Assembly: GCA_965113315.1 (NCBI GenBank)
Contig: OZ220367.1
Strand: one strand, 5' to 3'
Length of the DNA stretch: 64,000 nucleotides
From: Podarcis vaucheri
Lineage: Eukaryota
This document shows positions 3,701 to 62,682 of the stretch, in pieces. Both the position numbers and the translations under genes were made by a program. The stretch's first letter is position 1, and the number at the start of each line of letters is the position of its first letter. Under the pieces are notes generated by a model, which worked only from the letters and a program-made list of their open reading frames with translations, had not been told where the DNA came from and did no database searches.

Positions 3701-6700
3701 AGTTGTGCAAGCCTTTGGGAGGCAGAGATGCAAGAGGGTATCAGAGGTGGAAGGGAAGGAAAGAAGGAGAGACAGAGGCCAGTGTTGTCCATGGCACCCG
3801 TGACCATCATTCAAGCCACCCCAGGGTGCCACGGCCCACTGGTTGAGAACCACCAAGTTGGACTATAGGACTCCTCTGCTATGTACTTGTATTGCAATAA
3901 GCAGCTGCTCAATCAGGCAATATTATTAATTTTCCAAAATCACCAATTACTGTTATACATACAGAGCTGATTGCAAGGTTCAAAAACCCTATAACTCCTT
4001 AAATGCAGCACACAAACAGTTCAGGTGCTATACGTAACAATGACAATAGTAGCTGCCGAGATGTCCCCAAGGACAACGTGTGCTTTGTAGAATCTGGCTA
4101 AAGAACAACAACAAAAATAGTTGTTCTTCCCCACCCCCATCTACTTTAAAAAGCTTTTAGAATATAGTGTCACAATTTTAACCCAACCAGATATATATAA
4201 TTGTTCCTGTAAAGAGCTTTGGCTTGTCCAAGCAAAAAAGAAGAGAAAAACTATCATTTACATGTTTGAATTATGCTGACAGTATGCACAGAATTAAGTT
4301 AGCAAGCATTCTGATGAGTGACTAGGGAATAATTGGGGAACAACATTTTTACCCTGGTTAAAAGAATGTGGAATAAAATAAAAAACCAGAAGAATACTCA
4401 CAGGCTCTATTGTCATGTTCATAGCACACAGCAACAGTTTAACATCTGGTATATGTATGTACTCCATTTAGATAAAAGTTGTGATGTTTATCAAGTTCTC
4501 AAACTGTTATTAATATATTCCCTTAAATTTTACACAATTTTACAATCAGAAGCTAAACTAATCAGAAATATTATGATCAGCTTACCTTATAAAAGTGCAT
4601 AATATCATCCTTAGTAAGAGTTTTGAGATATGCCACTTCAATGTTATCTGGATGACAAAGATTATAATTAATACAATTAAGAAATTTACACTTCCTTCAA
4701 ACCACAACACCTCAGCATATTGTAATTATTATTATTATTTATTGAATTTATGTACCGCCCTATACCCGAAATATGCCTGTCACTGAAAATATTGCTACTC
4801 TGAAGGATCAGGACATTTTCTGAAGCCTGTGCACATGTGACATTCCATGTCCTTAGCTATGATTAATGGATCAGGAGTATCTGCATCAAGCATCATATGT
4901 TCTTAGACTGATGCAAAGGAGCACTGGAATTTCTAGAATGCAAATCCCTCATCACATAATCGATTATAAGAATACATGCCAGGCAGCTTTCAAAAATGGA
5001 ATGTGGTCTAGATGGGGCAAAGAAATAGATAATACCACAGAAATAGCTAATAATAATTTAATTTTAAAAAAAAATTATTTGTACCCCACCCATCTGACCA
5101 GGTCACCCCGGCTATGTGCAGTATCCCAGCATTGTGACTTTGACACTAATTAATCTTCTAAGTGTATTCCAGAACTAAATATTATTATTTTATCATGCAT
5201 GGTGGGTACACTTTAGATGGTCTGAATTGTTACTTTTGTTAAGCTTTCATCCAAAAAAAATTACATTTCCAGCTTGGGAGTGCTTCTTACCTCTGTCAAA
5301 GTTATATTGCTGGGAAATAATTTCGCCCCAGTATTTTGCACACTCAGCAGACAGTTTCTTTGGTTTGTCAAGGCGACGAATTGCTAAAGCCTGGATGTGC
5401 TTCTGGAAGGCTTCATCAGACATGTCCTCTATACTCTTCTCCATGGTTTTTAAAAAAGCTTCAACCCTGCTCTCCAAGTAGTGTGGAGGTTTTTCTGACT
5501 GGATGATAAATCGTAGTCCTTGGATACCATTTGCCCGCCGTGGACCACTGAACACAATGTAACCTTGAAAAAAACCAAATAATTCATTCTATTAGACTAA
5601 CTAAATAAATAATTAAAAAAGACAGAAGGGGTTTGTATTTCTGCCCTTGAATTCTGGCCAAATTCTAACATGACCATTAGTGCCTTAAATGGCCTTACAT
5701 CAAGTGAATAGATGATATAACTATCGTAACTAATCTCAGGTTTTAGCTTTCGTGCAAGCTAATGGAGGGATCTCACATTATGCATTTTGACCATGAAGAA
5801 AACAGCATATATATTAAAATTGTATAAATCACTTTCATGATTCTCCTGTATCTCTTTGAAACAGTGATTTCATTGATTTGTCACTGAGCACAAAGGGCTC
5901 CAAACCAGCAATAAGATTCCACAGCCATCACATGGACAGCACATTACATTGAACTATAGTGGCTGAAGTATACAATCCAAATTCTGCTCACTATAACAAT
6001 ATTTAGGTGATCTATGAAGACAGGCAAGCTATTATTTACCTAACTGTTCTTTAGTGCGCAGGGTATTGAAGCAAGGCTCTGAGATGATTTGACAGAAGAG
6101 CTCCAAAAACATATTCTCTGAGGTGCTTTGCATATCTGTTTGATAATATATTTCAATGCCACAATTGTTATGAACCTCGTTCCTCTGTTGATAGACGAAC
6201 CAACCTCCTAAAAAAACATGAAAATGATGCAAAGGGTCATTTTGAAAGATGGTCAAGCAGGGAACCATCCATACTCTCTATGCGATGTACACTAGTTTAG
6301 AGAAGAAAATATAAGTACTCTATATAAACACAATCTGGAAGCCTAGGACTGAGATGAATTACCGTTCTTTTTGCTCTATAAGACTCACTTTTTCCTTCCT
6401 AAAAGTAAGGGGAAATGTATGTGCATCTTATGGAGTGAATGCAGGCTGCGCAGCTATCCCAGAAGCCAGAACAGCAAGAGGGATTGCTGATTTCACTGTG
6501 CAGCAATCCCTCTTGCTGTTCTGGCTTCTGAGATTCAGAATATTTTTTTTCTTGTTTTCCTCCTCCAAAAACTAGGTGCATCTTGTCATCTGGTGCATCT
6601 TATAGAACGAAAAATACGGTACTTTTTCTAGTCATGGTTTCTTTGTTCCATGAGCAAAGAACTTCAGCTTATATTATAATCAGGTGCATAATTACCCCAA

Positions 6701-12700: not shown

Positions 12701-15700
12701 CGCATGTACTAACAAGGTTAAAATAAAATAATGGTTAAGAAATGAAGATTTGCGATGAACGTTGCCTGATTTTTTGATGTTCTATATTCAAATTATATGG
12801 TCAGATAAAAGAAATAAATGCCCTTCAAGATGGGCAGGGCTCCCTCTTAACTGAGATCTCATATCATAGTTTGAAGCTGGATGGCAAATCATTATTCATC
12901 CATGATTAAAAGGTTACCCTGACTAGCATTCATCAACCAATACTGGGGCCAATAAAACACATCAGGAATTTGCCTGTAATTGATGAGCAGCTGGCAGGTG
13001 GAGGAGAAGAAGCATGGGATCCTGTGGTCTGTTCCTAATCTCTGAACCAGCACTAAGGGATGGGAAACAGCATATATGTGCTGGCGAGAGGAAGAGAACT
13101 ACAGAAAGATAGAGTCATAGCTGAAAAAGCCCTCACTAAATTTAATTGACTTAAATCTTATGGATGACTACTCTGAAGTCACATTATTTTCAAATGGAGC
13201 TTACTCTCAGGCAAGTGTGCAAATGACGACAGTCCAAGTGTGGCACCAATCATTGCAGTCTTATACCTTTCTGCAGGCATATGTACATTCCCTACACATT
13301 GTTCATAACTTGTTTGAACTTTTAGGCTCTGTACACCCCCTCCTGCCTTCAAGGAATGAAATATTGCATGTATGGTGTCTTCCACTGCTTGATAGCCTGG
13401 GCTGCTTGATATTCTGATTTATAAGGATCAAAGTCAAGTTCAAGATGGCTTACCGCCTCCTTGATAATTTCAAATCTTTTTTCATCAATCTCAAAGGTAG
13501 CCATTTTCTCAACAATCTTCTTGAGCAGGATATGCTGCTTGTCATTGTAACCTTTTACGGAAAGCTATAGGAAAAGGATATATAAGCTGTTATGTGTTTG
13601 AAATATTCTGTTTTCTATAATTCTAGATTGTCCATCAAAGCAGTAAACAGCAACTTCTTAACACTGGGAAGCATTCTCCCTTATTTCACCAGAAATACTA
13701 AGGTTTGCCCTTTACTACATGGAAGTCTATGTGTGATATTATTACTGTGTTACTTTTTCCCAGGGCTTAACATCTTCTATTACAATTGCAAAGCAAAATT
13801 ATAGTGGAAAACAAGTATTGTTCCATGCTGCAAAGCAATGCTTCAAATGTCAGGTAATAGAAAACGGAATGAAATGTTGTTGCTCTTTCCCAGGATTAAA
13901 ATCAGAAAAGCAATATGCTAATTGGAATGAAAAGAGTAGTTTATCATTCTTTTTCCAAATGAAGAATAAAAGTATCCTAGGAACCCAAATCTAGAAAAGA
14001 ATATAGGAAAGAAAAACTTCTGTTCCATAGTTAATAAAGCAGAAGAGTCCATTATATACTGATTTTTAAGAAGTAGGGACTTTCAAATGTTTAAGACATC
14101 AAGATGACAGGTTCATAAAATCATTGCATAACTCGGTTGACCACCATACACACAAGGCTGTATTGAACGCAGTGCCAACTGGGTGCTGCTTGTGCAATGT
14201 GACTTCAGTTTCCTCTCCCTTTCCTGCCCCCCCAACATGCTAAACAGGCTTCTCCACCCTTCTGGAGCTTACTCTGAAGGTGTATAGGGAGCTAGAGGGG
14301 ACAGGAGAAGAAGAAAAAAGAGGATTTGCAGGTACTGATGACTAGCAGCATCTGCAAAGCTCCTTGTGCATATAAAAGATAAAACCTTTGTTTTAGCAAC
14401 ATCTTGCTGCCTGCAAGATGCACCGACTCACCTGTCATTTGTGATGTCTGTTATGTGGGAGACTCTGCCAACCTTGCAAACTAAGCCTCTGAGGCAGATC
14501 CTAATAAGGATCTGGCCTATGAAGTCAAAAGGGCTCCCCAACCCCTGTGCTACATGATGAAAGAATTTAGAATGGACTTGACTCATATTGACTAGATCCC
14601 AGGTTGCAGTCTGAAAACATAACACCTTGGCAACCTTGCTGGTGCTAAATAGGTCTGATCAGATGAGAGGCTGCTGAACAACACTTTGTACACCACACCG
14701 AGTTCCATGATGGAAAAAATGGCAAGCTACAAATGTAAATAAGCAAAAATACTATAAAACTGTGCTGTTTTCCCCCAGCCAATTTTAGCACTGAAACCAG
14801 TACATTAAAAAGCATGCTTTTTAGCAGCCCCATGTTTCGTCAGATAAAGAAAATGTATGACCTATGCAGAGATTACTGGAGTCTTAAAAGTAAGTGCAAT
14901 GTTTTGGGAAAGTTTAGGGAAGAAATAGTCATGTACTAGAGATCACTTTTTAATGTACTCATTTGTTATATAAGGACCCTGTTTCACAAGTCATATTGAA
15001 CCTGAAATGCAGTCTTCTCATACCAATAATGCAGTTAGTAATATTTAGTAAATTGCATGTCTTATGAAGGTGGTTCTGGCACACAAAAGCTCATGCTGCA
15101 ATAAATGTATTAGTCTTCAAGATGCCCTGCAGTACTTTGGTGGTGGCTGGGGTTTTTTATTTTTTAAGTATACATTAGGATCTAAATGACTGAAAGCCAG
15201 CAGAACTCCATGTTTAACTAAAAACATAGCAACTCTTTCAAGGTTACTAGACTATACAAATGAGTAAGAAATGCAGATCAGTAATGCATCAGCACACTTC
15301 TCAGTCATAAAAAAACCAATCCAATCATGGCCAAACCATTCAATAAATGGTTATAAAACTGCACAAGTCTCACGCCCTTATGATAGGGATGCAAAGGAGG
15401 ACAAAACCAGTAGCCATTTTTTCAAGCAGCACTCAACTCTCACGCCATCTAAATTTTGCTTGTTCACCCNNNNNNNNNNNNNNNNNNNNNNNNNNNNNNN
15501 NNNNNNNNNNNNNNNNNNNNNNNNNNNNNNNNNNNNNNNNNNNNNNNNNNNNNNNNNNNNNNNNNNNNNNNNNNNNNNNNNNNNNNNNNNNNNNNNNNNN
15601 NNNNNNNNNNNNNNNNNNNNNNNNNNNNNNNNNACTAACAAAAAAGAAAAACAAAACAAAAGGATGCTTTGATACTTCAAGGAGCGACACGGTAATGGAT

Positions 15701-16451
15701 GAAGAAACATGACTGAAGAGTATGTATATGCAGCCTCATAACTAATATTCTCGGGAATGAAACACTGGGAATTTGATTTCTCATTCGGAACTCTAGTGGA
15801 ATGGAGCAGTATCTCAACTCCAATTCGGACTGTAAATTTGAGTTTTAAGTAAAAAAAAATAATCTTGCAAATATTCTGGTGAATGACATAAAATGAAGTG
15901 CAAAAATTGCTGAATGCGAATGGAAATGTTGAAGACTCCAGAAATTTCAAATTATGAGAAAGTATAGCTAGAAATCAAGGTTGAGAAAGAAACTGAAAAA
16001 AACAGGTTCTCAATTGGAAAAGCCATTGAAAAATTGCTTCCGGCAAATCATTTTTTTTCCTTCTGATTAGTGGAAGTAAATTTAAGGCTTTTAAGATTNN
16101 NNNNNNNNNNNNNNNNNNNNNNNNNNNNNNNNNNNNNNNNNNNNNNNNNNNNNNNNNNNNNNNNNNNNNNNNNNNNNNNNNNNNNNNNNNNNNNNNNNNN
16201 NNNNNNNNNNNNNNNNNNNNNNNNNNNNNNNNNNNNNNNNNNNNNNCCACGTAAGCAAATGGGCTGGAAGAAAATGTTGAAAGTAAAATATCTGCTGCAA
16301 TTACTTCCCAGTTCTGCTAGATCCTCCATACTGGATCTCAAGGACACAGTAAAAAAGAAAATCCTGCTTCCTGTTATGAGAATATTAAGACTGTATGTGA
16401 ACACAAACACACAGCTAAAGGGGGAAAGATTGATTAAACAATTCCACACTG

Positions 16452-16484
<33 letters not shown>

Positions 16485-19400
16485 CACACACGTATTACAT
16501 CTATGTTAAATCTACTGCGTAAGATTACACAAAACCATTTTTAGCTCACATTATTCTGAATTTGCTACAAAGACAAATGCTTACAAACAAGTACAAAACA
16601 TATGTAAAACACTTAAAATATACAATGAGTTAAAAACCGCCACAGTGGATAAATCTAAAAGCTTGCCAAGTAGGACAGTCTCACACTTAACTTGCTTGTC
16701 ATCAGGATTAAACCTCACTGAACACAGCTGCTGGTTTCACAAAATCAGGAAATAGCGCAGTTATAGGTTTGCTACCAAACCACTGGCATTTTCTATATTA
16801 GGCACAAAAATATCAAAGTTTTGTATTTAGCTATAGCACATAACACTACCCTGATATATTTTTGCAATATCCCAAGGAGGAAGAGTACGCTGCACAGACT
16901 TCCAAAGGTAAAGACAACTCAAAGACTCAAGTCATGTTTCAACAATACTGCTTCGCACCAACATATTAAGAGTGACAAACCAGATTAAGAGCAGAAGTAA
17001 TTTGTGTACAGTATGGTCTAATATCTATTATGGATATATACATATAGCAGTTAAAAATATGAAATCATCAACATCGCCCAAGTAAATTGTTCACAAAGCA
17101 ACATTTCTTACTGAAGAATTCTATCATAAGTAAAATAAAAAGTACAACAATATTCAGCATGTTAAAGCAAAATAATAATTATGGGGCAGAATAATGATTC
17201 AAAGAACAAAACATTTAATTAAAACCATACATCTCTTTTTGAAGAAAAATCAGAATGTTCTTTTAATAATGTGAAACAAGTGACCCTTTGCACAATGATT
17301 TCTGACATGCAAACCAACACTATTTATTCAGAAGTTAAGTTTCACTGGGCTCAATCAGACTTGCTCCCAGAAATGTATGCGGCCTCAATATATGTTAAAA
17401 CTCACTGGACAATGTTGCATTTTCATATACATCTTATCTCAAGGCTATTATTGTAGAGACCCATCACAAGCAGAAACAACAAAATCAGAAAAGGCTGAGA
17501 CCTCATTTTTAAAACCTTTTCAATACAAAACTCATCAGTAGATAAAGAAGTTTGTGGGGGATGACTGCATTTTACTTAATATAGGAATTATCATTTCAAG
17601 ATACATAACCACCCAAGTTTCTATCTATAAACTCTCTTACAAAACTAAGCAGTACTGCAGTTCACATGCTTCCTCAAAAATCAAAATGGGACCATGAAAT
17701 TAGCTAGCAATTATATTAAGTGTAAAACCCTAACTTACTTGGTTTTATCTTAAATTTCATTTTCAGTGCTGTAAAATGTTAAGTATGCTTCAACTTTAAC
17801 AGGAAATTTGACTTCAGAACCAAGCAATTTCACCAAAGTAAGTTTTTAACTGGTCTATACAAATATCCCCAGCTCATAATGCTCAGCCTTCCTTATGAAC
17901 TGAGCAGCATTACACTGAGAAATTATCAGGCTTATGAGCATATTTAGCTCATAAGAAGCTCTGGAACATATATTTTCTGTTTGAACGTTCAGCTGCTTTG
18001 GGAAAACTACACACCACATTCCAGACACGACAGAAAACGGAGGTTTTGTAGAAAGGCACCCTGGTTGTTGCTAACATTACAAGTAAGTTTATACTCTAGG
18101 GATGGTGATTAGAAAGGTGTGCTTGGGCCCTTTTGAGATCCCAGTGACATTGAATCAAGAGTGCAACAGAGTTTCCAAATTGGGGTATGTGAGAGCTATT
18201 ATCTGATGGGGTGAATATTATCAGCAATATTAGCAAATCCCAATTTCAAATTGAGTAATTCATCATCACTAGATACAAAGGGAGACCTCTGCGGGTGATC
18301 AGTTGTACTGCACTGGAAATGATTTAATGATTCAAGCACAGCCAATGCAGAGATGCAACAGTATTATCTGGCCCAGAAGTCTGGTGGGAAGGAGGCAAGA
18401 CCTGAAACGTAGTTTATGCAGAACCGCAATGGTGATTATGGGTTCACAGGAATGCTAAATATATTTATTTTATTACTTGTTGCATATTAACTGTTCTCAA
18501 AGCTCCCAAGCTGAGACAGACCAAAACAAAGATGAATTATTTTGTGTGCTAAAGAATGTTTTTAAAATCAAAAGCAGTTCTAAAATTGTTCTGGACATTT
18601 GAAGGGAGAGGAGAATGAAGCCCTGTTCATTTATTTCCCTCCATATGACTGTACATGGAGCTGGATCCACTGGCCTCATTGATATTCCCCAACACACGGA
18701 GACAGCAGGGGATAAAACAATGGTGGGAGGCTAGAGCAGGGTTTCCCAAACTTGGGTCTCCAGCTGTTTTTGGACTACAATTCCCACTTTTGCTTTTTTA
18801 GGATGCAGCTTGAAGTGCTGCAAAGGCTCAAGAAGTGATTCTTCCACAGAATATGGTAGGACACAAAATGCATGTGTACAGTAAGGGAATTATGGCTCTA
18901 CAATACTAATTCCTGCTATCATACCAGTTTCTGACAAATACAACAGTCCTACATTCTACTTCTTGGACAAATCTTACTTTTAAAAAAACCTTCCTCCAAA
19001 ATCAGATGCTCCTAGCACACACAAAAATTACTTTAGGGGTTAAATAAGGATAGTAGAATGGTACCAAAGTTGTATAAAAGTGGACTTGCCCAGGTCAAAC
19101 AAGGCACTCATCGGGATCATAAAGCTGAGGGACTGCTCCGCTGAATAGACTGAAAGCTACTTTCCTTTGAGGAATGAATTAATCAAACAATCAAACAAAC
19201 AAACACACACCCATGGCTTGGATATAGCCATACATGTGTGGAAGCATGTTTCTGTGCATATATTCTCTGTGCTGTGAAGCTCTATCACCAGAGGTATGTT
19301 TGGTGTAGGAGTGTGGTGAAGGAGGAGAGTCATTAACAGCTCTTGGATTATGTTTAAAACACTCTTGTGGCACTTTAACAGTAACAAATTAAGATGCTAA

Positions 19401-22400
19401 AAGACTTTGTTGCTTGTGCTGCAACAGATTAACATGGTTGCTCCTCTGGAACGTGGACAATACTTTTCAGCCAGCACAAAACCTGTGCACACTGTTGCAC
19501 ATCCATAATGCTGGATTGCAGCAATAAGTGGGAACCGACAATCTCAGTTATTCCACTGTAGCAGCCCCATTTTATCATGTCTAGAATGATAAAATGTTTT
19601 CTTGAATGACTCTGCTTAGAATGATAAATTTTAAAGACAAGAATGCGTGCATACCTGAAAAATTCAAAGTTGAGACAAGCTTTGGGTAGGAAAAATTTGT
19701 CATCTTGCTTGAACCATAGCTTGCACATAGCAGTGTCCTGAGTTTAAGAAAACATACATTTCCTATTATTATTATTATTATTAAATTACAAACTGTATTT
19801 TTATCATTTTAATCTGTTTATATTCTTTAAACATACAGATCCAGGCCATCTGAGTTTGGGTGCAGTCCCACAGGGTTTAACAGAGCCCAAATTTCTCAAC
19901 CCCACCCCAATTAAGCACACAGTGATGCAGACCTATTCCCTACGATGTTCCCTTGTGCTGTCTAAACACATGCTTCTATGCTAACATTTCTGAGATGGAA
20001 GGAGGACCTATAAGCCCTGTGGGACTTTTGCCGGTATGAACACTAAATCCATACGCCGTTTGATTGCACCACTGCCAGGTAAGTCTGAAAAGAAGAGACA
20101 GGTATGGCAGGGTCTGGGCTTACCTGATATTGGGATGACCCATTAGGAGTTCATCTCCTAACTCCGCAATTTGAACTCACTTCCACCACTATGTGAAGGT
20201 TTATATACTTTGTATACGGGGCAAAAAGCCAACTGGATAGGAGCTAGTCACCTCTTAAAATAAAGATCCAATTTTCATTCATTTTTACATTCTATTCTTA
20301 CAATACTGTTCATATTATAAGCAGCCTACTCAATGACCTTAATCTTTCAAAAGCAATTCAGGAAAGAATGGTACATATTCCCGAAATTCCACCCACAACT
20401 ATTAAATACATATGCTTACCTTGATAAGAGTAGGGTACTGTGGTGCATCCTTCTCTAAAGGTACAATTTCAAAGTTAGTAGGGATAAATTCATTCTTCAT
20501 TGGCAGCTTGAATTTCCCATTGAGGTCAGCATTTTGCCATTTCTACATTCAATGTGCAAACAAGAGGATAGTTTTGTTATTATCCAGTGGGTGGGTTAAA
20601 AAAAATTGTGCTGCAATTGTGCTGCTCTATGAAGGATTATTGACCTCTGATGAATCATGCTTCTTCAAAATTAATTATTACTAATGTTTCAAATTATTTA
20701 ATCTGTATGATTCCTTGCAGTTCACATAATACCATTTAAGTTTGCTTTTAACTATGTTCCATAAACACTTAGAACATAGCACTGACTGAGGGCTAGAGTG
20801 CATGCTCTAACCACTGTGTAGAACTACTAAGAAATGCTTTCTGCAATATGTATCACCATGTGAGCAGCTGGTTTTCACTCTTAGCAATATGTGAAAATAT
20901 TACACAAATCCTCCAAACACAGCTGCGTGTGTGATCATAGCTGTATGTTCAGCTAGGTGCTCTGCACATAGTTTCTCTCTCGCTAAAGCTTATTAATCAG
21001 GATTTTTTTTGGGGGGGAGGTGTTTTAAGGGTCCAACATGTATAGTACTGGCTGCACCACAAAGAGATGTTCAAGGATTTGGTTCACATTTTGAAGTGAA
21101 ATCTATTTCCCCCCATAACACCAGTTGAAATTAACTGACACCAATGTGACACACTTATACAAGCAACAGTATCAGTTGCTTTTGTAAACAACACAAAATA
21201 AACTTTATTGTAAGCAGTGGCGGAGCAAGCCGATTGGGCGCCTGGGGCAGCACATGTGCCCTGTGCCCAGGGGCGAGGCCATCCGCCCGTGGGGGCGGGA
21301 CAGCCACCCACAGGGGTGGGGTGACCCAGGGCAGGACGCTCCGCAGGGCCTCCGAGGAGTCTGCCTGCCTTCTCCCACTCAGCCACCCTACAGCTGAGGG
21401 GAAGGTGGCGGACCATTTGGGGCAGTGCAGAGCCTGCGGGCACTCAAGCCACTGCATCACTCCCAGGAGAGACGCCTGCCTTGGGTGTGCTGCAGGCCCC
21501 GCAGTGAGTGCCGCCCAGCATTTTGTCACCCCCTCCAATGGCGACACCCTGGAACCGCCCCCACCGCCCCCCTTCCTCCTCCCTGATTGTAAGAAGTGTG
21601 AAAATACTGGTTACATGTTCAGTTTACCACCAACTTTCTCACCACACCTTAATGACTTCATCAGAAATTGCCTCTTGCTTGTACTGGGTTCCATACCATT
21701 TTTCTGTTCTATCTGTTTTTCCTTCAAAAGACTTAGAAACTATTGCAACCCTAAAAAATAAAACCAAAACATAGTAAGTAAGCAAGCAAGCATATTACCT
21801 CCCCCGCCCCCCCCCAAAATACTATTCAAATAATTCTGCTTGGTCACTAAGTTCAAAGATTCTGTTATTAATACTGTAAATTCTATATGTCCTATTCTAT
21901 TTTTCCATGTAATCCTCCTGTCAGTAAAACAAAAAGCAACATTTATCCATATCAAAATGGCTATGTTAAACGACCCCTTGTCATAAAAGATATATATATG
22001 CAGAGAGAGAGAGAGAGAGAGAGATTATACACTGAACTTGCGTATAAGAGGATGTATTTTACAGGATTTAATATATTAAGCTCAGTTTGTTTTTTGCAGC
22101 TATGCAAAATTTCACTAAAAATTTCACTAAAATAAAAGATTTCTAGCTCTCATGACAAGTATTTAAAAAAAGACGTTAACAGAATATTTGAAAAAATTCC
22201 CAGCAATTAAGAGCATATATAACACACCCAAGGTGCTCCTAAATTCATTTTCTACCATTTCTAAACAGAAATTTGAAGCAAAGGAAAAGACCATGCAAAT
22301 GTCATCCATGGGTAAAACTACAACATACTTTTGTGATCATGCTCTCTGCAACATTTTAACAACTGTTTCCAATTAGCTTTAACAGTTTTCCAGGCTTCAA

Positions 22401-28400: not shown

Positions 28401-31400
28401 TTGCTGTGAAACAAACAAAAAAGCAAAATAAATCAGATTTAAACTGAACCCAGTATTTTGCCTTTACAAGGCTACTTTTCTTCTCAAATCCACCACCCAC
28501 AGTTCATTACACATATGCCCATTTCATGCTTAGGCCATAACATAAAATTAATATTGCTCAACTGCATTTTCTAGCAGAACAATTAGTGAAGTTTCAGGAA
28601 GGGACCGATTACACCTACACCCACACCTTTTCCAGCCAACATACATTTGTCTTGCTGTACAAGTAATTCTGATGTGCTATGACGCTACTCAACTTATCAC
28701 AGTAGTTTTCTGGTCTTGCTTAAAAACACAACATAAAACTTATTTTAAAAGAAGTCACAATGCAATAAACCCACCCTGAGATGTTCTTCCTGGAAAGGAT
28801 GTTCAGGGAATTCTGGTAATGGAACGTTTTTGTTCTCTACTTCAGAGAATAGCTTCACTACCAAACCTGTTAGCTCATCTAAAGATTCTGTATGCATATA
28901 TTTGGGAGGAAAAGAAAGTTACACATGGTCAAAAGTTTCACAGATGTTATCCTTGATTGCTCCTTTTAGAGAAAGCCTTGATAAGCACAGTCTTAAGAAA
29001 AGTCAGTATCTAAAATCTGTATGCATTTTACACATTCTTCAATATAAAAATTCTGTGCCCAGAATAAAATCTGTCTATGTACTGTTGATGCAGCACAATG
29101 TATTCTGTGTACAGTAAGTATCTTCCTAAGGAATTAAAACTATGGAGTCTAGACTGGGAGGCAGAAAGCAGTGAGACTAAGAAAGATACGGAGATTGGAG
29201 CATGCTAGGAAATGCATGTCACTGAAGCCTGCCCTCCATGTTCTGAGTTCTGGAACATCACTGCATGTTTATATTTTAAGATTCATCTATAAGAAAATAC
29301 TAGGGCTAGAAACATATACATTATATAAAAACAGACATTTTCAGAATGACAAATTCTGCAGCAGACACACAATCTTTTTCTTCTACTACAAATCTGCAGA
29401 GTACATACATCCCTTCCTATAATTTTTTTTAAGTCATCCTACAAATTAATAAGTGTAGATATTAGAAATGCTACAGATTTAAGGTAGACCTGTGGTTTAG
29501 GATTTGGAGAGTGGTTGCATTCTTTACACACCCACACAGAGTTAAGTTCCAGTGCTAATCCATTGTAAATTGATTATATATTAAAAGTAGCTCCCAAAAA
29601 GTTTGGCATTCTTACCTCGTCCTAGAACACAAACAGCCATTAAATTTGATGAATAATAAGTGGAGTGAAACTTCAATAACTCTTGTCTTACATCTATTCC
29701 TTCTTGGTTTGGTCTAGTTTCCAAAGTGAATTTGCTTCCTACAGTACATAAATAAAAAGAAGGATGTGTTACAATAAGAGCCATGACTGGGTTAAATGTG
29801 CTCAGTTCTGTAAAAACTGTTAATCCCTGCAATCACAAGAGGCGATACTGCACATATCCCTCAAACAGATTACAGCATCTCAATTGTTTTATATTACTAC
29901 TACATTTATACTCTTCATTTCCTCCAATGAGCTCAGGTGGCATACATGGTTCTCCGCACCCCCTCACTTTATTCTCATAACAACAAATGATGGGCATTGT
30001 GCATGCAGATCCTATTTATATTTCTATCACATGATGGTACTTCTATCGAGTGCAAGATGTTTATCGGATTTCCTGCTTTCATGATTTCAGCAAGACCATT
30101 TGTGGCTCAGCTTGAATAGCTTGGAGTTAGGAGAATTGAAATCTGGAATTGTGTTCTCAAGGGATTGCTTCTACAAATCCTTTTTCTAAACTTTTATTTG
30201 CGCAATTTTAACAGCTTTTATACACACATCGTACAGTATCCATCACTTATCTCTTTTCCTAAGACTTCCCAATCCATCTCTCTGTAACATTGTAGGGAAA
30301 TCTTGATCTACTGCATATCCTGATATTTCACCAATATCATTTCAAGTCTTCCTGTTTTGATGTTATCTGCTGCTCATATGTCAACTCCTACTTGTGGATT
30401 AAATTGTATATTTTACCCTCTAAAATAATCTCCAAAACACCTCCACTCTTATCTTTATCTCATCCTTATTCCTTAGAATACATAGCATTAGTAACCATGA
30501 CTGTGAAACTATCAATCTGTTTTGCCAAATTTCCATCGTGGGTATCTCCTCTTCTTTCCGTTTTTTCGCATATACTGTTCTAGCTGCAGCGGTTGTGTAC
30601 AGAAAAATACTGAGTGCCTTTTTTGGAATTGGAATATCATCACCTATTATCCCTAATAGAAAGGCCCCTGGCCTTTTGAGAAACGTGAGTTTTAAAATCT
30701 TATTTAATTCTGTGTGGATCATTTCCCAATACTCTCCAGCATATTTACATGACCACCACATATGGATCAGGGTTCCCTCCATCTCGTGGCACCTCCAGAA
30801 TAAATTAGACCCTTTTTTATACATTTTCACTAATTTGCTGGGTTTTGCTTAATAAGATAACAGGCAAATCCTATTCTGATATTCATAATATAAAGGTTGT
30901 GTAGAGCAGAAATACAGGTATGTTAATCATACAATTAGTGTTGTGCCTAACAACAAATGCAGTGTATATCCTCATAGTTCATGGACATGTTCAGGCCAGC
31001 GTCAGATATAGTGTTATTGAGTCAACAAAGCATGGTTTGTTGGAGTAGAAATGAGCAGTTAGCTCAAGCGCTTCCTCCTCCCACCCTTGGCCTTAGATAA
31101 GACTTTCGGGATAATTAAAACAGTTTCCCCACGATACCTGACTTAGGAAACTGTGGTTTAAGTCAGGGTGGATGTCACTCACTTGACATCATGTGGCAAC
31201 TTCAAATGGGCTGCCTGCCAGTGCCTATCTCCCAGTTCTTATTAATCAATAATAATTTTCTAAATTACTTCACTTTTTTTGGCAGTGAAAAAGGAAAATC
31301 AAGACTAGAGTTTCTAATTTCCAGTAAGCTGACTCTAACATTGCTGCTATGCAAAATAAAGCTAAAACACAGCATTCTGGGTTGATGAAATGTAGTTATG

Positions 31401-34400
31401 AAAACAAGCTTAATGCAAGAAATCACAAAATAAGTGAGGTGAAGATAATGTTCTAAAAATAATGAGAACAGGGATTTAAAAAATGATCAGCTCAATTCAC
31501 AAATAGTAGTAATGAATACAGACAAGCACGAATAAGAAAAACCATTCAAGATACATAAACAAATGGTCTTATTCAATTTATGATGAATGCACAGTAGTTC
31601 AGGTCTCCGTACACTTTCATTGTGAATTGCCACCCTTACAGAATAATTCAACATTGCACTTTCCTGATTGCTTTGCCAGACAGAATGATCCCCCCTTTCT
31701 TCCCCTCCCCATGCCCTGTTATCCTGACCCTCCAGAGCAGATTTGGGGGTTGTGGAGGGGGAGGAAAGCCCTGTTGTACTAATTGGAGTCCTTGCACTGG
31801 CTTCCGCTAGCACACAAGGTTAGTGGAATCTGACTCAACATCTGCACTTCACATGGCAGAGTATCTGGTGCTGCTATAACTCTTTAAGCTTCTGTTTTCT
31901 TTTTTTTATTTTAAAGACTACAACTACATTTGAAAATAAGAGTTTTTGAAATCATGTTTAAGACAAAAAGTGACCATTATCAGAAAGGGATCTTGCTGCC
32001 ACCATTTTAAACCTAACATGTTCACCAAAGGTAATACCGCTGTAATAAACGGACGGAATAAAACCTTAGGAGTGAGAGCTTGCATGCTGCTCTCACTTAA
32101 CCAGACTTAAACCCTCTGCTATCACAGATTCAAAGAACATTTCAATCAAAAGGGTGGATGATCTATGCTGAAAAAGAGATAAGGGAAGTGAAACACACTG
32201 ATTCATCTGAACTTTACTGTGGCATCAACCACAATATCTTTCTGGAAAATTTCTCAGGAATTGCTTTGTTTTCTGGTTTAAGAAGCAGTGCTGAGAGAGG
32301 TTTCTTCCACCAGTACAGCTATATAATACTTTTTCCACACTTATAAAGAAATATTTCTTCTAGTGTGGCAGCACTCACACTTTGAAACTCTCTACCTAAG
32401 TACTCTTTTATGATCTGCTTAAAACATTTTTGTTTACGCAAGCCCATCCATGTAGATGTTGACATGCTTTAATCTCTCTTCAGTCTACTGTTAATTTTAA
32501 TTATCTTTTAAATGTTTTTAATTACAGTATTTATTCTTAAACTGATTTTTATTGGTAATTTTAATACTTCTTGTAAGCCACTTATAGGCTTTGTAATTAT
32601 CATCTGGTATATAAATTCTGTTAAATAAATGTGACACATTCTCAGTTGCTTTTAAAGATGAATCAAATGCAGTAAACCACCATGTGTAAAGGGTACATCA
32701 TCAAATAATTTCCATACAACATGTTTTTATTTTAACACATTCTTTAAAAAAAAAAGATTTTCCATCATACAATTTAAGAGAAAAAGAGAAAAAAAATACA
32801 TAACAGAAAAGAAACATTAAATCATTATACATTAAATCATTATACAATATCCAAAAAAGAAGAAGAAAAAGAACATAAACAAAATAAAATGAACCCACCA
32901 CCCTGTTTAACTTCCCTCCACCACTACTCGTCTTCTCTAGAATCAATTTTACCCTTATCATTGCATTCTGGTTGTTTTTATTTTTTCTATATACATACAT
33001 ATGTCACTGATAATTTATTGTTTTGATGCATTTACATTCTTAGTCTAAGCATATTAGCATGTCTTTTTTGGAGCAGTATTTTGCCATATAGTCATCAAAG
33101 CATTGCCATTCATTTTTCAGTTTTTGATTTGACTGCTGTCGTATGGATGCTGTTAGTTTAGCCAATTTTAAATATTCATTTAATTTGAGAATCCATTCCT
33201 CCTTGGTAGGGAATTCTTTAGCTTTCCATTTAGGTGCTATTACTATTCTAGCTGCGGTGGTTGCATATAAGAAAATTCTTTTTTTCGATTTCAGTATTTC
33301 TTTCCCTAATAGGTAAGCCTCTGGTTTTTTCATTAGTGGGATTTTAAGCATTTTTTTCAAGTCCTCATGTATTTCTCCCCAGAAGTACTTAATTGGGCGG
33401 CAGCTCTGACTTTAATCTTCTCATATGCAAGGTAGGCATGCTATCCATACCTGTTGTTAAAGCCCTCCAGGTCTAATAAATCTGCTTTTTCCAAAGTGAT
33501 CCATTCTTCCAGCTATACAAGGCATTCTGCTTCATAAAATATTTTTTCCAATATAAAATAATGCCTTGGAGCCTCCCAGCACAGCACAGTTTAAAGGGAC
33601 TCCCCAATCGAAAGCAGATCATGTGCAAATGTAATGGAAGATTAAATACCTGTTCCAAATTTACTGAAGGGGTGATTGGGATTTCCAGTAGCCTTTTCCA
33701 GCTGAAATAGTCTCCAAGCATCATTCATTAAATTCTTCTCATGCTCAGAATCAACAGCATTCACTTCTCTGTCTTTGCAGCTTTCATCAAACAGAGGGCA
33801 CAAGAAAAACTGAGCAAACCTGCAAGAAAAAAAGTCAGATTTCCCCAAATCAATGTTTCGACAATTACATTGTTGATAGTTTAACATATGAAATTCATGT
33901 TCAGTGTGGAGAAGCACACAATTTATTATCAGTTCAGGATAGGATTTGCCCACCAGGTCTGAGCCTTTTGTCTTCAATGCTCTGGACAGATGCCCATAAT
34001 TTAATTAAAATTTTTGTTCACCTGGAGCCACCCTGTTGCTAAGTAGTCTCATCACCAAGTGGGTGTTCTAATCTAGTGCAATTTACTATAATGACCTTTT
34101 TAGCAGACAGGACACACTCTATGAGCAAGATACCATCAGCTGCCTTGTTTGCTACTTCAGATCTGCTTCTTCTTGCTGTTGTCTTATGAACTAGCCACTC
34201 AAAGTTTCCTTAGCAGAGGCCTGCTGTGTGTCTGTGAAAAAAGAGCTATTGGGACCTGCTCTACACAGACGTACTGAGGACCCTTCCAAAATCACCAAAG
34301 CTAATGTTACTAAGCCTCTCCTTGGCCCTCAACATGAACCAAAGAACTTTTTTTTAAAAAAAAGTAAAAGGACACAGACCATGAAATGAGTGAGGGCTGT

Positions 34401-37400
34401 GCAACCTGTTAATTACTTTGTCTTTGGGAAAAAAATCATGCTAAATTACCTGGGAGTAAGCCCCACCAAATTCAACTTACTTCTGAGTAGACATACCAGA
34501 GATTGCACTGTTATTTTGCTAACTCTGAAGTAAAATCAAATATACAGTATGCAAAAGTAGCTTGAATATCCCTTTTTTCACCAAATATAAAATTCCACAG
34601 AGAGAAGAGCCTTTGAGAGTCAGCTGATAAATATGCAACATATGCTGAGAGTGTAAGCAGAATATATTTATAGAACAAACATATGTGAGGTTCCTATGCA
34701 ACACTTTCATGGTTATGTAAAGTAACAGCAAAATGATAAACCATATGAAGTTTTTAAGACACTCGCCATACTGTTGATGAGTCTCTCCTCACTTAGAACC
34801 TATTTTGATATACTACCGCAAGGGCTCATTCCATATGTTTTCTTTTATCACTGTTATTCCCAAGATATTAAAAGTATTTCAGTAATTTAGTCTTTACAAT
34901 TGTATTAAAGTCATTATTATAAAAACGCAGAAGTAATAAATACACTAAATAATGTTATCATCTGGTAGGACTCTCATGTTAATTGTGCTTGCTGGAAAGA
35001 CAAAACCAAACCAATATATTTAATCATTAATAGATATGCTCACCTGTCCAGGGCACCTTCCAAGTGTTCATGTGATACATCAAAATAAAAGTTGGTGTGT
35101 TCTCCACTGGTAAAAGCATTTGAACTTCCTGCATGTTCACTGAGAAATTGGCTGTACTCATTTTCTTTTGGGTATTTCTCAGTTCCCAAAAAAAGCATAT
35201 GTTCACAAAAATGGCTTAACCCAGCAATGTTAGGGGGATCAGATAATGACCCTATGAATAGGAGAAATGGGCAGAAATAGAGTATTACTTTAAAAGCTGT
35301 TACACATATTCAGTATAAAGCAATCAAATCATCCAGAACAATCAACATTTTAACACTTTTCTCTGGGTCAGAGAAATCATCTTACTGATTATGACTGCAA
35401 ATATTTAAGAAATTATATAGCTCCATTTCCCTTTGCAGAAAAGCTAGGCGGGAATGCACCTGCTAGTATACAGCTGCTTCATACTAACTTTAGAGAAGCT
35501 ATAGGAAAGGTGTTAGCTGGAAATCAGAGGCAAGTGGTTTATGTGAGCATCCCAAGCACTTCAAACTACAAAGAAAAGATATTTGATAAAGCAGGACATA
35601 CATATGTAACCATTTTGGTTTTTGGTTTTTAATCAGAACATCTAGTAACAACCATGTTCTAATTTCATGTTTGCTTAACATGCAAATACATCATTTTTAG
35701 GCCTACTATCTGACTTCTCAAACATATTACACAAGGAATAATTTTCATATGACATGCCATATGCCATTAATTTATACCAGGAAATTAAACTATTTTAATT
35801 CCCCGGCAGACATACTGGGAGCTTAAGCGCAGAAGGATGTGGAGCATATAAATTGAGTTCTTCTATCATTCATCCTTGAAAAACTTAGACCTGCTTTAGA
35901 ACAAGTAATTTATACAGCCAGTTTTATAACAAACCTAACTTCTGAGGCTAATCTGGCTAAGGCTACAATCCTACTTCCATTTACCTGGGAGAAAGCTACA
36001 CTGAATTCAACAGGACTTCTGAGTAGAAATGGATAGCCAGCGCTGTAAGATTGCAAACCTATACACATCTTCCTGGGAGTTCCTGGGGTTTTGTGCACTT
36101 CCATATAATGTCAACTTCCAAGTAAGCAAAACTAGGATTGCAGCCTCAGTATAGTATGTAGAAGGTTGTAAACCATTTTTTTTGAAAGTTATCACATTTG
36201 AATTAGATTACAGTGCAAAACCAAGTTACAGTATATTATAGATGATCATATACCTATGTGTACATCAAGTGCAGCTGAAGACTTGTCTGTAGTGGGGTCA
36301 CTGATAAGCATTGCCTTGATGCCATTTGCCAGTTCTAGCCCACGATACTCTCGTTTATCTTCAGGTGATTTGATAATATCATTTGCTATTCTTTTAATAG
36401 CAAGATGACTCATTTTGTTGTGTGTTGCTTGATGAAGCCTAAAAAAAAAAGCAGTAAAAGTTAAAGCCATATCTCAGTTCAAATAGCCTAAGAAAGAAAA
36501 GGGGGAGACGCATTTGCAACTCAAGAACACTCAACTCTAGAAGGTCCAGATCAAAAACTTATTGTCCACAGTCCAACACTGTAAGGCGTACTTAAGTTCA
36601 CTGAAATCAATAGACTAAAGCTATATTACTTCCTTCAAATGTAGAACAGCTCTGAGTGCTTTCAATAACAAGTTGGCCTAATAATGGTCACAGTGAATCC
36701 AGTTTATTAATATCTATTTTATAATATTAAAAACCTGTACTTTATTTCCTTTTTATCTATAACAGTATAGTTGCTGTCAGCCTTCACTAATTGATAATAT
36801 TGGCTATATATTGAAAAAAGTGCAATGTAAAATCAACATATGCTTGTCTAAATAAAAGCATTATTTCAGTTATGATGCAGTAAAGCCTAGTTTATAACAT
36901 CATTTTCATCTGCCAAGAGTAGATTACTATAGCTCTTTAAATCCATGATGAATTGCTTTACAATGAATATAGAATGCTAGAGAGCCAAAATGAACTGACC
37001 AAGCAGGTTTAAAATGTCACAACCACACTCCCAATGACAAGCCAAAAACAGTTTACTTCAATGTCTGTGATTCTGTGAATTATTTCAAGCCCACATGAAA
37101 GGTGAAGTCATTCATGCTGGGCTATTTACCTGACTACACCCTTATTCGGAACTGAATAAATATAATTGCATTTCCTGTATTTGTTCATGCTACATACACC
37201 CTATTCCTGACCTGTCATTGATTTAGCTAAAAGAAAAGAAGAAGCATAGAAAAATAAGTAAACCATCCCTGCACATATTCCAGGTACCAGGCATCATTGC
37301 AAGAGCTTCTTGTTCTTTCATGCCTTTGCATACAGTCTCTTGCTTCTTGGCTTTCATGTAAAGCATATAAATACATATTTAAAATATATGCCTGAAAGGA

Positions 37401-43400: not shown

Positions 43401-46400
43401 AATAGGAACCATGTGACAAACTGGTATCTGTTTCTATCTGGGAAATATGTCAACCAATATTTTAAATATTAAGCCACCCTATATACTACAAAAAACCTAG
43501 TTAAAAAGCTGGACTGTACTCTCGCCAGCTGCTTTAACCAAAAAAAGTAACACATTTTTTTCCTAACCACTTTTGTTGTTTCCTGTAATCAATTCTTATC
43601 TAGTAGGTACCTTAGAAATATAAAAGCCAACCTATACCCTCTCTTTGTTATTTGCTGCTGTATGACCACCTTATAACAGGGATGGCTAACCTCAGTTCAG
43701 GTCTGATCTGACCCCTTAAGCAATTTTTTTCTGGCCCTCCCAGAACTCTGATTTTTGCTGCAGAAGCAAAAAAGAAAGAAAATGAAACAGACACAGTGCT
43801 GGAGTGGGAAGAGCCCAGTGCCCCAAAGGGAATTCAAATCATTCTCCAGTGTCATGAGATTGATCATCTGAGCAGAGAGGGAATGATAATCACTCTCAGC
43901 GTGGATCAGCTGGGGTGGGGAGGCTGTCTGCCTGTGGATATTTTGTGTAAGAGTGTCTGCACACATGCAACATGCAAGTACATTAATGAGTGTGTGGCAG
44001 CCACACCTACTACTGGAATGGGACCCCTAAGTGAATCCCTCAAGTCAAAGAAAGCTACCCTGCCTTACAGAGAGAAAACTCAATTAGCATGCTACACAAA
44101 TTTTCTATCAAAATACTAACCTTTTATGAAATCAGCAACATAGGGCCTGATCTATCAAGAAAAATGGCTCTCTTGCTTTAAGCCTCTGTGAGAAACAGTT
44201 ATATTTCAGTAATTGGGATGAGTTCATGAGTTTGAAGCCCCTGCGTTATCTCATCCTCCTGTGTCTCAAGGTCAGCGACTGGGCCTGCTAATTGAGAATC
44301 GACTTCAGCTGTGAGAATGAACATATGCCCAAGTTCAGGAAGTTTCTAAGCGTTTTCATTGGCTCAGGGGACTCACCCCAGTTGCTATACCTTTTTACTA
44401 TAAAGTTAGCCATTGCCTTCACCCCTTTGTCTCTTCTTTCCTGTTGCTTGTACCTGTTTCTTTGTAACATCTGCAAGATCCTATTTCTGTGCTAGGGAAG
44501 CTTTCGGGTCACAGTTTTAGAAAGTTAGTTTCATGATTCCATTCATAATTGTCAATTGTATTTAAGATCTGCACTTTTTATGGGACTTTCACATGCTTTC
44601 CCCTTTTCTTTTGAATAACTATCTCATTTAGGATGGGTGTCTGCCTTTTGGGATAAAGCCTTTGTACTGAATCCAGTTCCTAAGTGCCCTGCTTTTAACT
44701 TCTCTTTCTCTGATATCCTAGAAGCATCCAGTAAGGGTCTCTCAGCCCAGGCTGGTTGGACTTAAGGAGCAGTGGTAGTATACTACATTGCAGGGTTGGT
44801 TTTATACCCTGCTCAGTAGACAAGATCTGAAACATCAAGAACTGTGCCCAGGGATTTGAGGTAGAAGTTATTGACATCAATGTAGCCCACAACTGTGACA
44901 CATTTCAGATTCAATGATACACTGGTACTATAAATCTAATGGGATCAAGATAAAGTAAAAGAGCATAATTTCATACTCTGACATTGAAATGGAGATACTC
45001 TGTTAGCAAACAGGAGCCACAGCCCCCCCCCAAAAAAAATGGGGGGGGAGAGTTAAACCTTTTTCTGGAGATGACAGAATTTCTTGTTAATAAGAAAAAA
45101 TAACAAACAAAGTGAACAAAAGGCGTAACAGTGTAGGATGGGAGCCTGGATGGATGATCTCATTGTATTAGCACTGGCAATGTCCAAACATTCATAGGGT
45201 GGATAGAAAATCCAACTACTGTCTATTGCTGCAGCAAAACGAAGCTATCTTCTGTTGTGGGATTCAGCAACTACTATTTGATCAATGAATTAAACATTGT
45301 GCCCAACTGGAACGGTATCCTCAATTCACCTTTTAAAAAATCAGTATTGATAATGTATTAAAAAGTTCAAAGAACATTTTAGAAGTACCATTTCCTCCAG
45401 GAAGACACAGAAGGAGGGCTGAGATATCAAATCATCTGAAGAACTTTTAATGTGCAAATGTACGCAGATTAACTAAAAATTAAATGGGAGATAGCCCTAC
45501 TTCTGATGTTGTGTACAGTACATGCATGTGGTGCACACACAGGCAGGAAAGAATAATTAAAGCATGAAATAATCTGCAGTATTGCCAACTCATTTTATGG
45601 ATTGTGTTGTTGAAACCTTTGTTCCACTTCTTTAAAAAATTTACTGATGTGGGTGTGTTGGCCTAATTACAACAGAATTAAGGGATGCATTTATTTCAAA
45701 CATATATCAGAGTATTAAGTTACCTTTGGTGAAAGCTTCTCAGTCATCCTTTCTTAACAATATGTTAGCAACAGATTTATATTTAATAAATAGATCAAAT
45801 AATTTTTATAATAGTTCTTAAATTCAAAAATCTTGCTACTACATGACACATTCACTGGAAACCTGTACAACCTGATCTTATTTATGTTTAGTGGTAGGCA
45901 ACTCCCACCAAGTTCAATGGAGCTTAATTCCAAGAGCACTTTGTTGCACCTCATCTTACCATTTACATTAACCTAAGCCTATACATTTTCAAAGCTTTGC
46001 ATGCTTTTGTTCAGCAATGTGGTTGTTCTTCCTCATACAGACCAATGTGTCAGAAAACAGATGCTCTATATACCTGCTGTATATTGTACTTAAACGACTG
46101 TATTTAAACTAACTGTTGCCTCATTTGTATTTAAGTATGTTTTCTGAGTACAAGCCAAATCCTACTCTGTTCAATTATGGCATACCTTTTGAATTCAAAA
46201 TGATTTATGGTGCAATTGTACAGCTGTCTACTAAGAAGTCTTATTTAGTACAGTGGGGGCTTACTCCCAAGTAAGTGTGTTTAGCATTGCTGCATGTGTT
46301 CTATGAAGTAAAACAGTTGTTAAACAGTGTCAAAACCACAGTTTTGAATGGGTGGGGAGAGAAGCTTCCTTCCTGTGGAACAACTTATAAAGGTGTCTAA

Positions 46401-56600: not shown

Positions 56601-56843
56601 GCGTCTCGTTTGAGGCGGTTCTTCTTGACATTCGCCGGTCCGAAGCGCTTCTCTTTCCTCCGGGAGCCGGCGGCTCTTTTTTTCCATCTCTCGCGGGCGT
56701 TTCGGCCAGCCGGTGGAGCTCGCAAGTGCGGGGACCCCCCTCCCGCAGCCGTTAAAGACGAAACGGGACTCGAGCGGCCGCCTCCCTTCCCTTCCCTTCC
56801 TCCGCTCCGCCCGCGTCGGGGTCTTGCCTGCACCGGCCTGAAC

Positions 56844-62682
<5,839 letters not shown>

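What the first reader, a model, noticed from the sequence alone, without database searches (positions are those of the whole stretch)
15715..15761. Intronic antisense copy of exon-15 codons between IDE exons 15a and 15b: candidate competing RNA-duplex switch for mutually exclusive splicing
Seen: the + strand, which is antisense to IDE, reads GAA GAG TAT GTA TAT GCA GCC (E-E-Y-V-Y-A-A, 15715-15735) and 15 nt later TCG GGA ATG AA (S-G-M, 15751-15761). Recalled from mammalian IDE, not visible here: exon 15a encodes N-E-Y-A-Y-A-A, and exon 15b encodes K-E-Y-T-Y-A-A...S-G-M-N. The pre-mRNA therefore carries GCUGCAUAUACAUACUCUUC, which is complementary to the block shared by both paralogous exons, plus a second arm that fits 15b only. 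The geometry fits too: the element starts 81 nt upstream of the 15b acceptor, and the KEYTYAA codons would start about 73 nt downstream. That gives a nearly symmetric hairpin with the 3' splice site and pyrimidine tract in its loop. Inference: one element could pair with either 15a or 15b and silence the paired exon, analogous to docking/selector pairing in Dscam1 and competing structures in Ate1. It could alternatively act as an ADAR editing-complementary sequence, since the predicted mismatches are of the A-C type. I know of no description of this for IDE.
Basis: partly seen in the sequence, partly recalled or inferred. Interest (0 to 1): 0.82.

Follow-up and report, generated by a model that had tools for sequence, protein, structure and literature searches.

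The report
Unproven antisense match in IDE intron

Summary
The letters and geometry are as described. IDE lies on the minus strand. The two N runs cover most of exons 15a and 15b. The element sits 81 nt upstream of the 15b acceptor.

What could be tested gives no support:
- The 21-nt arm has 3 mismatches to each degenerate codon pattern.
- Matches of equal stringency occur beside 3 of 36 flanks of visible IDE exons.
- Over all synonymous codings the arm-1 duplex spans -5 to -27.5 kcal/mol. The usage-weighted median is about -13.
- The best chance 21-nt intron-exon duplex at 18 visible exons has a median of about -19.
- There is no repeat copy, no similarity between the flanks of the two exons, no Rfam family and no unusual local fold.

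Visible letters show exon 15 is 3n+1 long. Skipping both exons, or including both, gives early stop codons, so productive mutual exclusivity needs no RNA switch.

Best reading: ordinary intron sequence with a chance resemblance (about 0.55). A real exon-pairing element is still possible (about 0.2).

The parts
15715..15735 (-). Arm 1. The pre-mRNA reads GGCUGCAUAUACAUACUCUUC. The + strand reads E-E-Y-V-Y-A-A.
   Evidence: It has 3 mismatches to each degenerate codon pattern.
15751..15761 (-). Arm 2. The pre-mRNA reads UUCAUUCCCGA. The + strand reads S-G-M-(K).
   Evidence: It sits in a weak local hairpin with 15780-15797 (-9.9 kcal/mol, z -1.4).
15470..15634 (-). Exon 15b. It is masked apart from its first base (T at 15634, completing Ser AG|T). 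The mask probably runs about 20 nt into the downstream intron.
   Evidence: The pyrimidine tract is at 15637-15663 and the acceptor AG at 15636-15635.
16099..16263 (-). Exon 15a. Its first 17 bases are visible (16263-16247, (S)PFAYV) and the rest is masked.
   Evidence: The acceptor AG is at 16265-16264.
19655..19737 (-). Exon 14. It ends TTC AG|gtatgc, leaving 2 bases of a Ser codon.
13454..13564 (-). Exon 16. It starts in phase 0 (CTT TCC GTA AAA = LSVK).
   Evidence: Both shifted frames stop early.
15350..15365 (-). Visible alternative partner of the element. A 16-bp uninterrupted helix (4 G-U pairs) with 15727-15742 would loop out exon 15b.
   Evidence: dG is -21.2 kcal/mol. It is the longest helix among 20 exon flank pairs, but 4 of 40 shuffles reach the energy.

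Best explanation
The stretch 15715-15761 is ordinary intronic sequence. Its reading as antisense exon-15 codons is a resemblance of the size that chance produces beside other IDE exons. Productive mutual exclusivity of exons 15a and 15b follows from reading frame. Each exon is 3n+1 long, so transcripts with both or neither exon carry early stop codons and should be removed by nonsense-mediated decay. This is inferred from established knowledge of NMD. Which exon is chosen is then set by ordinary splice-site strength and protein regulators, which were not tested here.
For: Arm 1 has 3 mismatches out of 18 constrained positions. The chance expectation in the window is 0.34 and 0.19, and a second hit lies at 55336. 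Equal-stringency antisense matches lie beside visible exons at 5702, 35356 and 33504. Their real duplexes are -7.4, -17.4 and -20.1 kcal/mol.

Weighted by codon usage, the median is -12.5 or -13.8, and only 11-18% of codings reach -18.7. For comparison, the best 21-nt intron arm against its own exon at 18 visible exons has a median of -18.7 to -19.2 and a range of -14.4 to -25.0.

The intron and the local region fold no better than shuffles (z -0.9, +0.2 and -1.4). There is no other copy in the window, no similarity between the flanks of 15a and 15b, and no Rfam family. The + strand frame is closed after 12 codons, so this is not a decayed inverted exon copy.

Frame: exon 14 ends with 2 codon bases and exon 16 starts in phase 0. 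The exon-16 frame used when both exons are skipped stops at codon 3. The frame used when both are included stops at codon 7. In humans, 60% of mutually exclusive exon clusters contain exons with lengths not divisible by three (PMC5740500).
Against: If the recalled 15b peptide is right, two collinear arms within 47 nt, placed between the two exons and on the correct strand, are jointly uncommon by chance. My estimate is 0.002-0.05. The best-case codings give a strong duplex: -25.6 to -27.5 kcal/mol for arm 1 and -16.7 for arm 2.

These two exons are the only masked stretches in 64 kb. That is an inference, because the masking rule is not known to me.

Frame-enforced decay explains why only one exon appears in productive mRNA. 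It does not explain how the exon is chosen.
Confidence: 0.55

Rival explanations
1. The element is a real exon-complementary RNA site. Arm 1 pairs with the K/N-E-Y-x-Y-A-A codons of exon 15b or 15a. Arm 2 pairs with the 3' end of 15b only. The nearer and stronger 15b hairpin encloses the 15b branch site, pyrimidine tract and acceptor in a loop of about 154 nt and represses 15b. This would make it mainly a 15b silencer rather than a symmetric switch.
For: The letters, strand, spacing and nesting of the two arms fit. Best-case energies are strong. The joint chance estimate is low if the recall is right. Clusters of mutually exclusive exons show an increased capacity for competing structures, and tandem duplication of one stem arm is a proposed origin (PMC6071210). 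In mouse liver 15a exceeds 15b about 1000-fold, so a default 15b repressor would make sense (PMC8467815).
Against: The exon letters are unseen. Three mismatches are already fixed by the recalled amino acids. The typical coding gives a duplex weaker than chance duplexes at other IDE exons. The arm is AU-rich. No conservation data exist. The element lies outside the masked stretches. It has visible intronic partners at least as good as the typical exon pairing. Known docking and selector sites are intronic, not coding (PMC7797038 abstract; PMC6071210 abstract).
Confidence: 0.2
2. The element acts through an intron-intron helix instead. 15727-15742 pairs with 15350-15365, downstream of exon 15b. 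This loops out the whole exon and favours its skipping.
For: The helix is 16 bp and uninterrupted, at -21.2 kcal/mol. It is the longest among the flank pairs of 20 exons in this gene. With the full 47-nt element the energy is -29.9 kcal/mol. Pair probability is about 0.66 when the masked exon cannot pair.
Against: Four of the 16 pairs are G-U. Four of 40 shuffled flank pairs, and 3 of 60 shuffled queries, reach the energy. Three other exons have flank duplexes of lower energy. The minimum-energy fold uses a different partner (15422-15441). There is no conservation evidence.
Confidence: 0.08
3. The element is a decayed relic of an inverted partial duplication of exon 15. It has real homology but no present function.
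For: Both arms are collinear and in one frame on the antisense strand.
Against: The arm spacing is 15 nt, against 30 nt or more expected from the recalled peptide. The frame is closed on both sides. There is no extended similarity to the visible exon flanks.
Confidence: 0.07
4. The element is an editing-complementary sequence that guides ADAR to adenosines in exon 15b, at the K and T codons that would lie opposite C.
For: If the recalled codons are right, the fixed mismatches would be A-C or C-A type. I worked this out.
Against: No RNA data could be obtained. The putative duplex is short and AU-rich. My literature searches turned up no report of RNA pairing or editing at IDE exon 15. Recalled from memory and not tested here: IDE is not among the conserved recoding targets I know of.
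Confidence: 0.03

Closest known systems
Docking-site/selector competing RNA structures (Drosophila Dscam1 exon 6, 14-3-3 zeta, srp; human ATE1 elements R1/R4 against R3)
   Same: It also lies between tandem-duplicated exons, which fits the duplication origin model of PMC6071210.
   Different: In the known systems the pairing elements are intronic, conserved, and shown by disruptive and compensatory mutation (PMC7797038). Here the proposed selectors are coding sequence that cannot be seen. Conservation is unknown. The conditional stability is not above background.
Frame-enforced mutually exclusive exons removed by nonsense-mediated decay when both or neither is included
   Same: Exon 15 is 3n+1 long, and both aberrant frames meet early stops in exon 16. 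In humans, 60% of such clusters contain exons with lengths not divisible by three (PMC5740500).
   Different: Decay only cleans up the products. It does not choose between 15a and 15b, so a separate selector, whether protein or RNA, is still needed.
Intronic editing-complementary sequences of ADAR targets (for example the GRIA2 Q/R and R/G sites; from general knowledge, not tested here)
   Same: An intronic segment complementary to nearby coding sequence, with A-C mismatches at candidate sites.
   Different: Known examples form longer, conserved duplexes, and editing is seen in RNA. None of this could be shown here.
Exon-looping stems between flanking introns (a general class of long-range intronic pairings that promote exon skipping)
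   Same: The 16-bp helix 15727-15742 with 15350-15365 brackets exon 15b.
   Different: It is statistically marginal and has no conservation evidence.

Membership tests
Docking/selector competing RNA structure | One docking sequence is complementary to two or more selector sequences, one for each mutually exclusive exon. | not testable with these tools
   The proposed selectors lie in 15470-15633 and 16099-16246, which are N. The operators forbid filling them. Only bounds could be obtained, from degenerate codons.
Docking/selector competing RNA structure | Duplex stability is clearly above what unrelated intron-exon pairs give. | tested here: inconclusive
   The conditional range is -5.2 to -27.5 kcal/mol, with a usage-weighted median of -12.5 or -13.8. 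The null median is -18.7 to -19.2, with a range to -25.0.
Docking/selector competing RNA structure | The pairing elements are intronic, as in Dscam1, 14-3-3 zeta, srp and ATE1. | tested here: not met
   The docking candidate is intronic, but both proposed selectors are inside coding exons. PMC7797038 describes five intronic elements.
Docking/selector competing RNA structure | The elements are conserved, with compensatory substitutions across species. | not testable with these tools
   No vertebrate genome collection was available.
ADAR editing-complementary sequence | A-to-G differences between RNA and DNA at the paired adenosines. | not testable with these tools
ADAR editing-complementary sequence | An extended, imperfect duplex between exon and intron. 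| tested here: inconclusive
   At best 8+10 bp in arm 1 plus 11 bp in arm 2. The arms would be separated by an unequal internal loop, 15 nt on the element side and about 39 nt by recall on the exon side.
Frame-enforced mutually exclusive exons (NMD) | Exon length is not divisible by three. | tested here: met
   Exon 14 ends with 2 codon bases (AG). Exons 15a and 15b start with the third base (C and T). Exon 16 starts in phase 0.
Frame-enforced mutually exclusive exons (NMD) | A premature stop arises when both or neither exon is included. | tested here: met
   The exon 16 frame used after skipping both exons reads F-P-stop. The frame used after including both reads FRKRLQ-stop. An earlier stop inside masked 15b cannot be checked.

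The most novel reading that the evidence does not exclude
A single intronic docking element between IDE exons 15a and 15b base-pairs with the homologous coding block of either exon, and through a second arm with the 3' end of 15b. That would make the exons themselves the selectors. It would be a vertebrate competing-structure switch with exonic selectors, which would also explain unusual synonymous conservation of these exons.
Probability: 0.15. Interest if true: 0.72.

Novelty: not a real feature. Interest (0 to 1): 0.3.

Why it matters
The 15b form of IDE degrades insulin and amyloid-beta less well than the 15a form (Farris et al. 2005, as cited in PMC7956289 and PMC10129079). I found no description of how the choice between 15a and 15b is made. 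A proven RNA element would offer a handle for shifting the ratio, for example with antisense oligonucleotides, as was done for ATE1 (PMC7797038). It would also be a rare vertebrate case in which coding sequence acts as the selector. As the evidence stands, this is a hypothesis resting on recalled peptides, not a finding.

Tried and rejected
**Transposon or repeat copy.** blastn of the intron against the rest of the window gave only short chance hits. Rejected.

**Matching element upstream of 15a.** The flanks of 15a and 15b share no similarity. Rejected.

**Known RNA family.** Rfam at E <= 1 over 13000-20000 gave only two sub-threshold chance hits elsewhere. Rejected.

**Stable local structure.** The intron, the 177-nt region and the arm-2 hairpin all fold within the shuffle range. 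Rejected.

**Inverted pseudo-exon.** The + strand frame is open for only 12 codons and is too short for a family scan. Rejected.

**Steric or distant-branch-point exclusion.** The 15a-15b intron is about 484 nt, inferred from an exon length of 145 nt. The nearest AG upstream of the 15b acceptor is only about 31 nt away (15668-15667, read), so the branch point should be proximal. Considered unlikely.

**Reads.** The Rfam scan and the folds were made by reference.

**Long-sequence duplexfold of whole flanks (second part).** It gave meaningless global pairings and was replaced by the 21-nt window scan.

**Left out under the operators' rules.**
- Filling or looking up the masked exon letters from any source.
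- Joining exons into a spliced protein model for a homologue search.
- The large protein searches, which were not needed for this question.

PMC8467815 prints mouse primers that lie inside exons 15a and 15b. I did not use them in any search, script, alignment or energy calculation, nor to stand in for the masked letters.

Full report
**Setting**

The window carries IDE on the minus strand. At least 18 coding exons read as insulin-degrading enzyme. KIF11 lies on the plus strand from about 57 kb.

Only two N runs exist in the 64 kb: 15470-15633 and 16099-16246. They fall exactly where exons 15b and 15a must be.

- Exon 14 (19655-19737) ends TTC AG|gtatgc.
- The 15a acceptor is visible (AG at 16265-16264), followed by C CCA TTT GCT TAC GTG G = (S)PFAYV. 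The mask begins after that.
- Upstream of the other mask there is a long pyrimidine tract and ttag|t, so exon 15b starts at 15634.
- Exon 16 starts at 13564 in phase 0.

**The observation**

The element starts 81 nt upstream of the first base of exon 15b. Both arms are in one + strand frame, but that frame is closed: stop, 12 codons, stop, then LIFSGMK. So this is not an open inverted copy of an exon.

**Is it more than chance?**

- Against the degenerate codons of K-E-Y-T-Y-A-A and N-E-Y-A-Y-A-A, the 21-mer has 3 mismatches each.
- Dinucleotide shuffles of the window give 0.34 and 0.19 such matches. An unrelated 3-mismatch hit lies at 55336.
- As a control with real sequence, I took 18 visible IDE exons. 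I searched the antisense strand of their 450-nt flanks for any 7-codon window of the neighbouring exon.
- At the raw criterion of 3 mismatches or fewer there were 30 antisense hits.
- At the per-site stringency of the element (p <= 4.3e-6) there were 3 hits in 36 flanks, at 5702, 35356 and 33504. The analytic expectation is 0.08 per flank.
- Their real duplexes with their own exons are -7.4, -17.4 and -20.1 kcal/mol.
- Second-arm-type matches (three codons plus two bases, exact) are common, at 22 in 36 flanks. About 0.03-0.16 are expected near arm 1 in a collinear position.

Arm 1 alone is therefore at chance level. The two arms together would be mildly unusual, but only if the recalled 15b peptide is right.

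**Could the duplex be strong?**

| Quantity | Energy (kcal/mol) |
|---|---|
| Arm 1, all codings | -5.2 to -27.5, median about -15 |
| Arm 2, all codings | -5.4 to -16.7 |
| Perfect complement of arm 1 | -35.9 |
| Arm 1, weighted by codon usage of visible IDE exons | median -12.5 (15b) and -13.8 (15a) |
| Null: best 21-nt intron window against its own exon, 18 visible exons | median -18.7 upstream, -19.2 downstream; range -14.4 to -25.0 |

Only 11% (15b) and 18% (15a) of the usage-weighted codings reach -18.7. So the proposed duplex would stand out only if nearly all masked wobble bases fit. That is exactly what cannot be seen.

**Other properties of the element**

- It has no other copy in the window, and the flanks of 15a and 15b share no similarity.
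- No Rfam family matches.
- The intron and the local region fold no better than shuffles.
- Arm 2 sits in a weak local hairpin (-9.9 kcal/mol, z -1.4).
- The element has a visible partner downstream of exon 15b. 15727-15742 pairs with 15350-15365 in a 16-bp uninterrupted helix (4 G-U pairs, -21.2 kcal/mol).
- That helix is the longest among the flank pairs of 20 exons. However, 4 of 40 shuffles reach its energy, and three other exons have lower flank energies.
- When the masked exon cannot pair, these pairs have a probability of about 0.66, but the minimum-energy fold uses yet another partner. I treat this as a marginal lead, not a finding.

**A simpler basis for mutual exclusivity**

From visible letters, exon 15 is 3n+1 long. 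If both exons are skipped, exon 16 is read as F-P-stop. If both are included, it is read as FRKRLQ-stop. Both products should be substrates for nonsense-mediated decay, by established knowledge.

Hatje et al. report that 60% of human clusters of mutually exclusive exons contain exons with lengths not divisible by three. They also note that competing RNA structures are usually not conserved over long evolutionary distances (PMC5740500). This explains the exclusivity of the products. It does not explain the choice of exon.

**Literature**

The 15a/15b isoforms are known (Farris et al. 2005, cited in PMC7956289 and PMC10129079). In mouse liver 15a is about 1000-fold more abundant than 15b (PMC8467815).

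I found no paper linking IDE exon 15 to an RNA structure. IDE is not mentioned in the two Ivanov and Pervouchine papers on competing structures and tandem exon duplication. The known docking/selector systems use intronic elements (PMC7797038; PMC6071210).

**What was not done and why**

So there is no RNA-seq, editing or related-species evidence.
- No vertebrate genome collection was available for an intron alignment.
- Primers printed in PMC8467815 lie inside the mouse exons. I used them in no search, script, alignment or energy calculation.

**Verdict**

The letters and geometry are confirmed.

| Reading | Probability |
|---|---|
| Chance resemblance in ordinary intron sequence | about 0.55 |
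| Real exon-pairing element, more likely a 15b repressor than a symmetric switch | about 0.2 |
| Intron-intron looping helix, inverted-duplication relic, or ADAR guide | smaller shares |

Noticed in passing
window 15470-15633 and 16099-16246: The only two N runs in 64 kb cover exons 15b and 15a. If both exons are 145 nt long, both masks end about 20 nt into the downstream intron. About 18 other IDE exons that are highly conserved at the protein level are left unmasked.
   Followed up: partly
window 15727-15742 with 15350-15365: A 16-bp uninterrupted helix (4 G-U pairs, -21.2 kcal/mol) joins the two introns that flank exon 15b. It is the longest among 20 exon flank pairs in this gene, but it is within reach of shuffles (4 of 40).
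   Followed up: partly
window 16440-16490 (minus-strand pre-mRNA, about 180-230 nt upstream of exon 15a): A (GTCT)n / (CAGA)n microsatellite followed by a short GT run lies in intron 14, close to the 15a acceptor.
   Followed up: no
window 30423-30848 and 33043-33411, minus strand: Two open reading frames of 142 and 123 aa in IDE introns resemble each other. By eye they look like the C-terminal part of a LINE-type ORF2.
   Followed up: no
window about 50900-51610, plus strand: Open reading frames with lysine- and glutamate-rich coiled-coil-like sequence, followed by a gag- or SCAN-like stretch, lie between the IDE and KIF11 5' ends. This may be a domesticated or decaying retroelement gene.
   Followed up: no
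window about 46000-48500 and 56400-57400: Two G+C-rich stretches (0.50-0.52 in 2-kb bins) sit at the 5' ends of IDE (minus strand) and KIF11 (plus strand). This is the head-to-head arrangement I recall from mammals (from memory, not checked here).
   Followed up: no
window 5702-5722, 35356-35376 and 33504-33524: Antisense 7-codon matches to the neighbouring visible exons, at the same stringency as the finding. They served as controls. Two of them give real duplexes of -17 to -20 kcal/mol with their own exon.
   Followed up: yes
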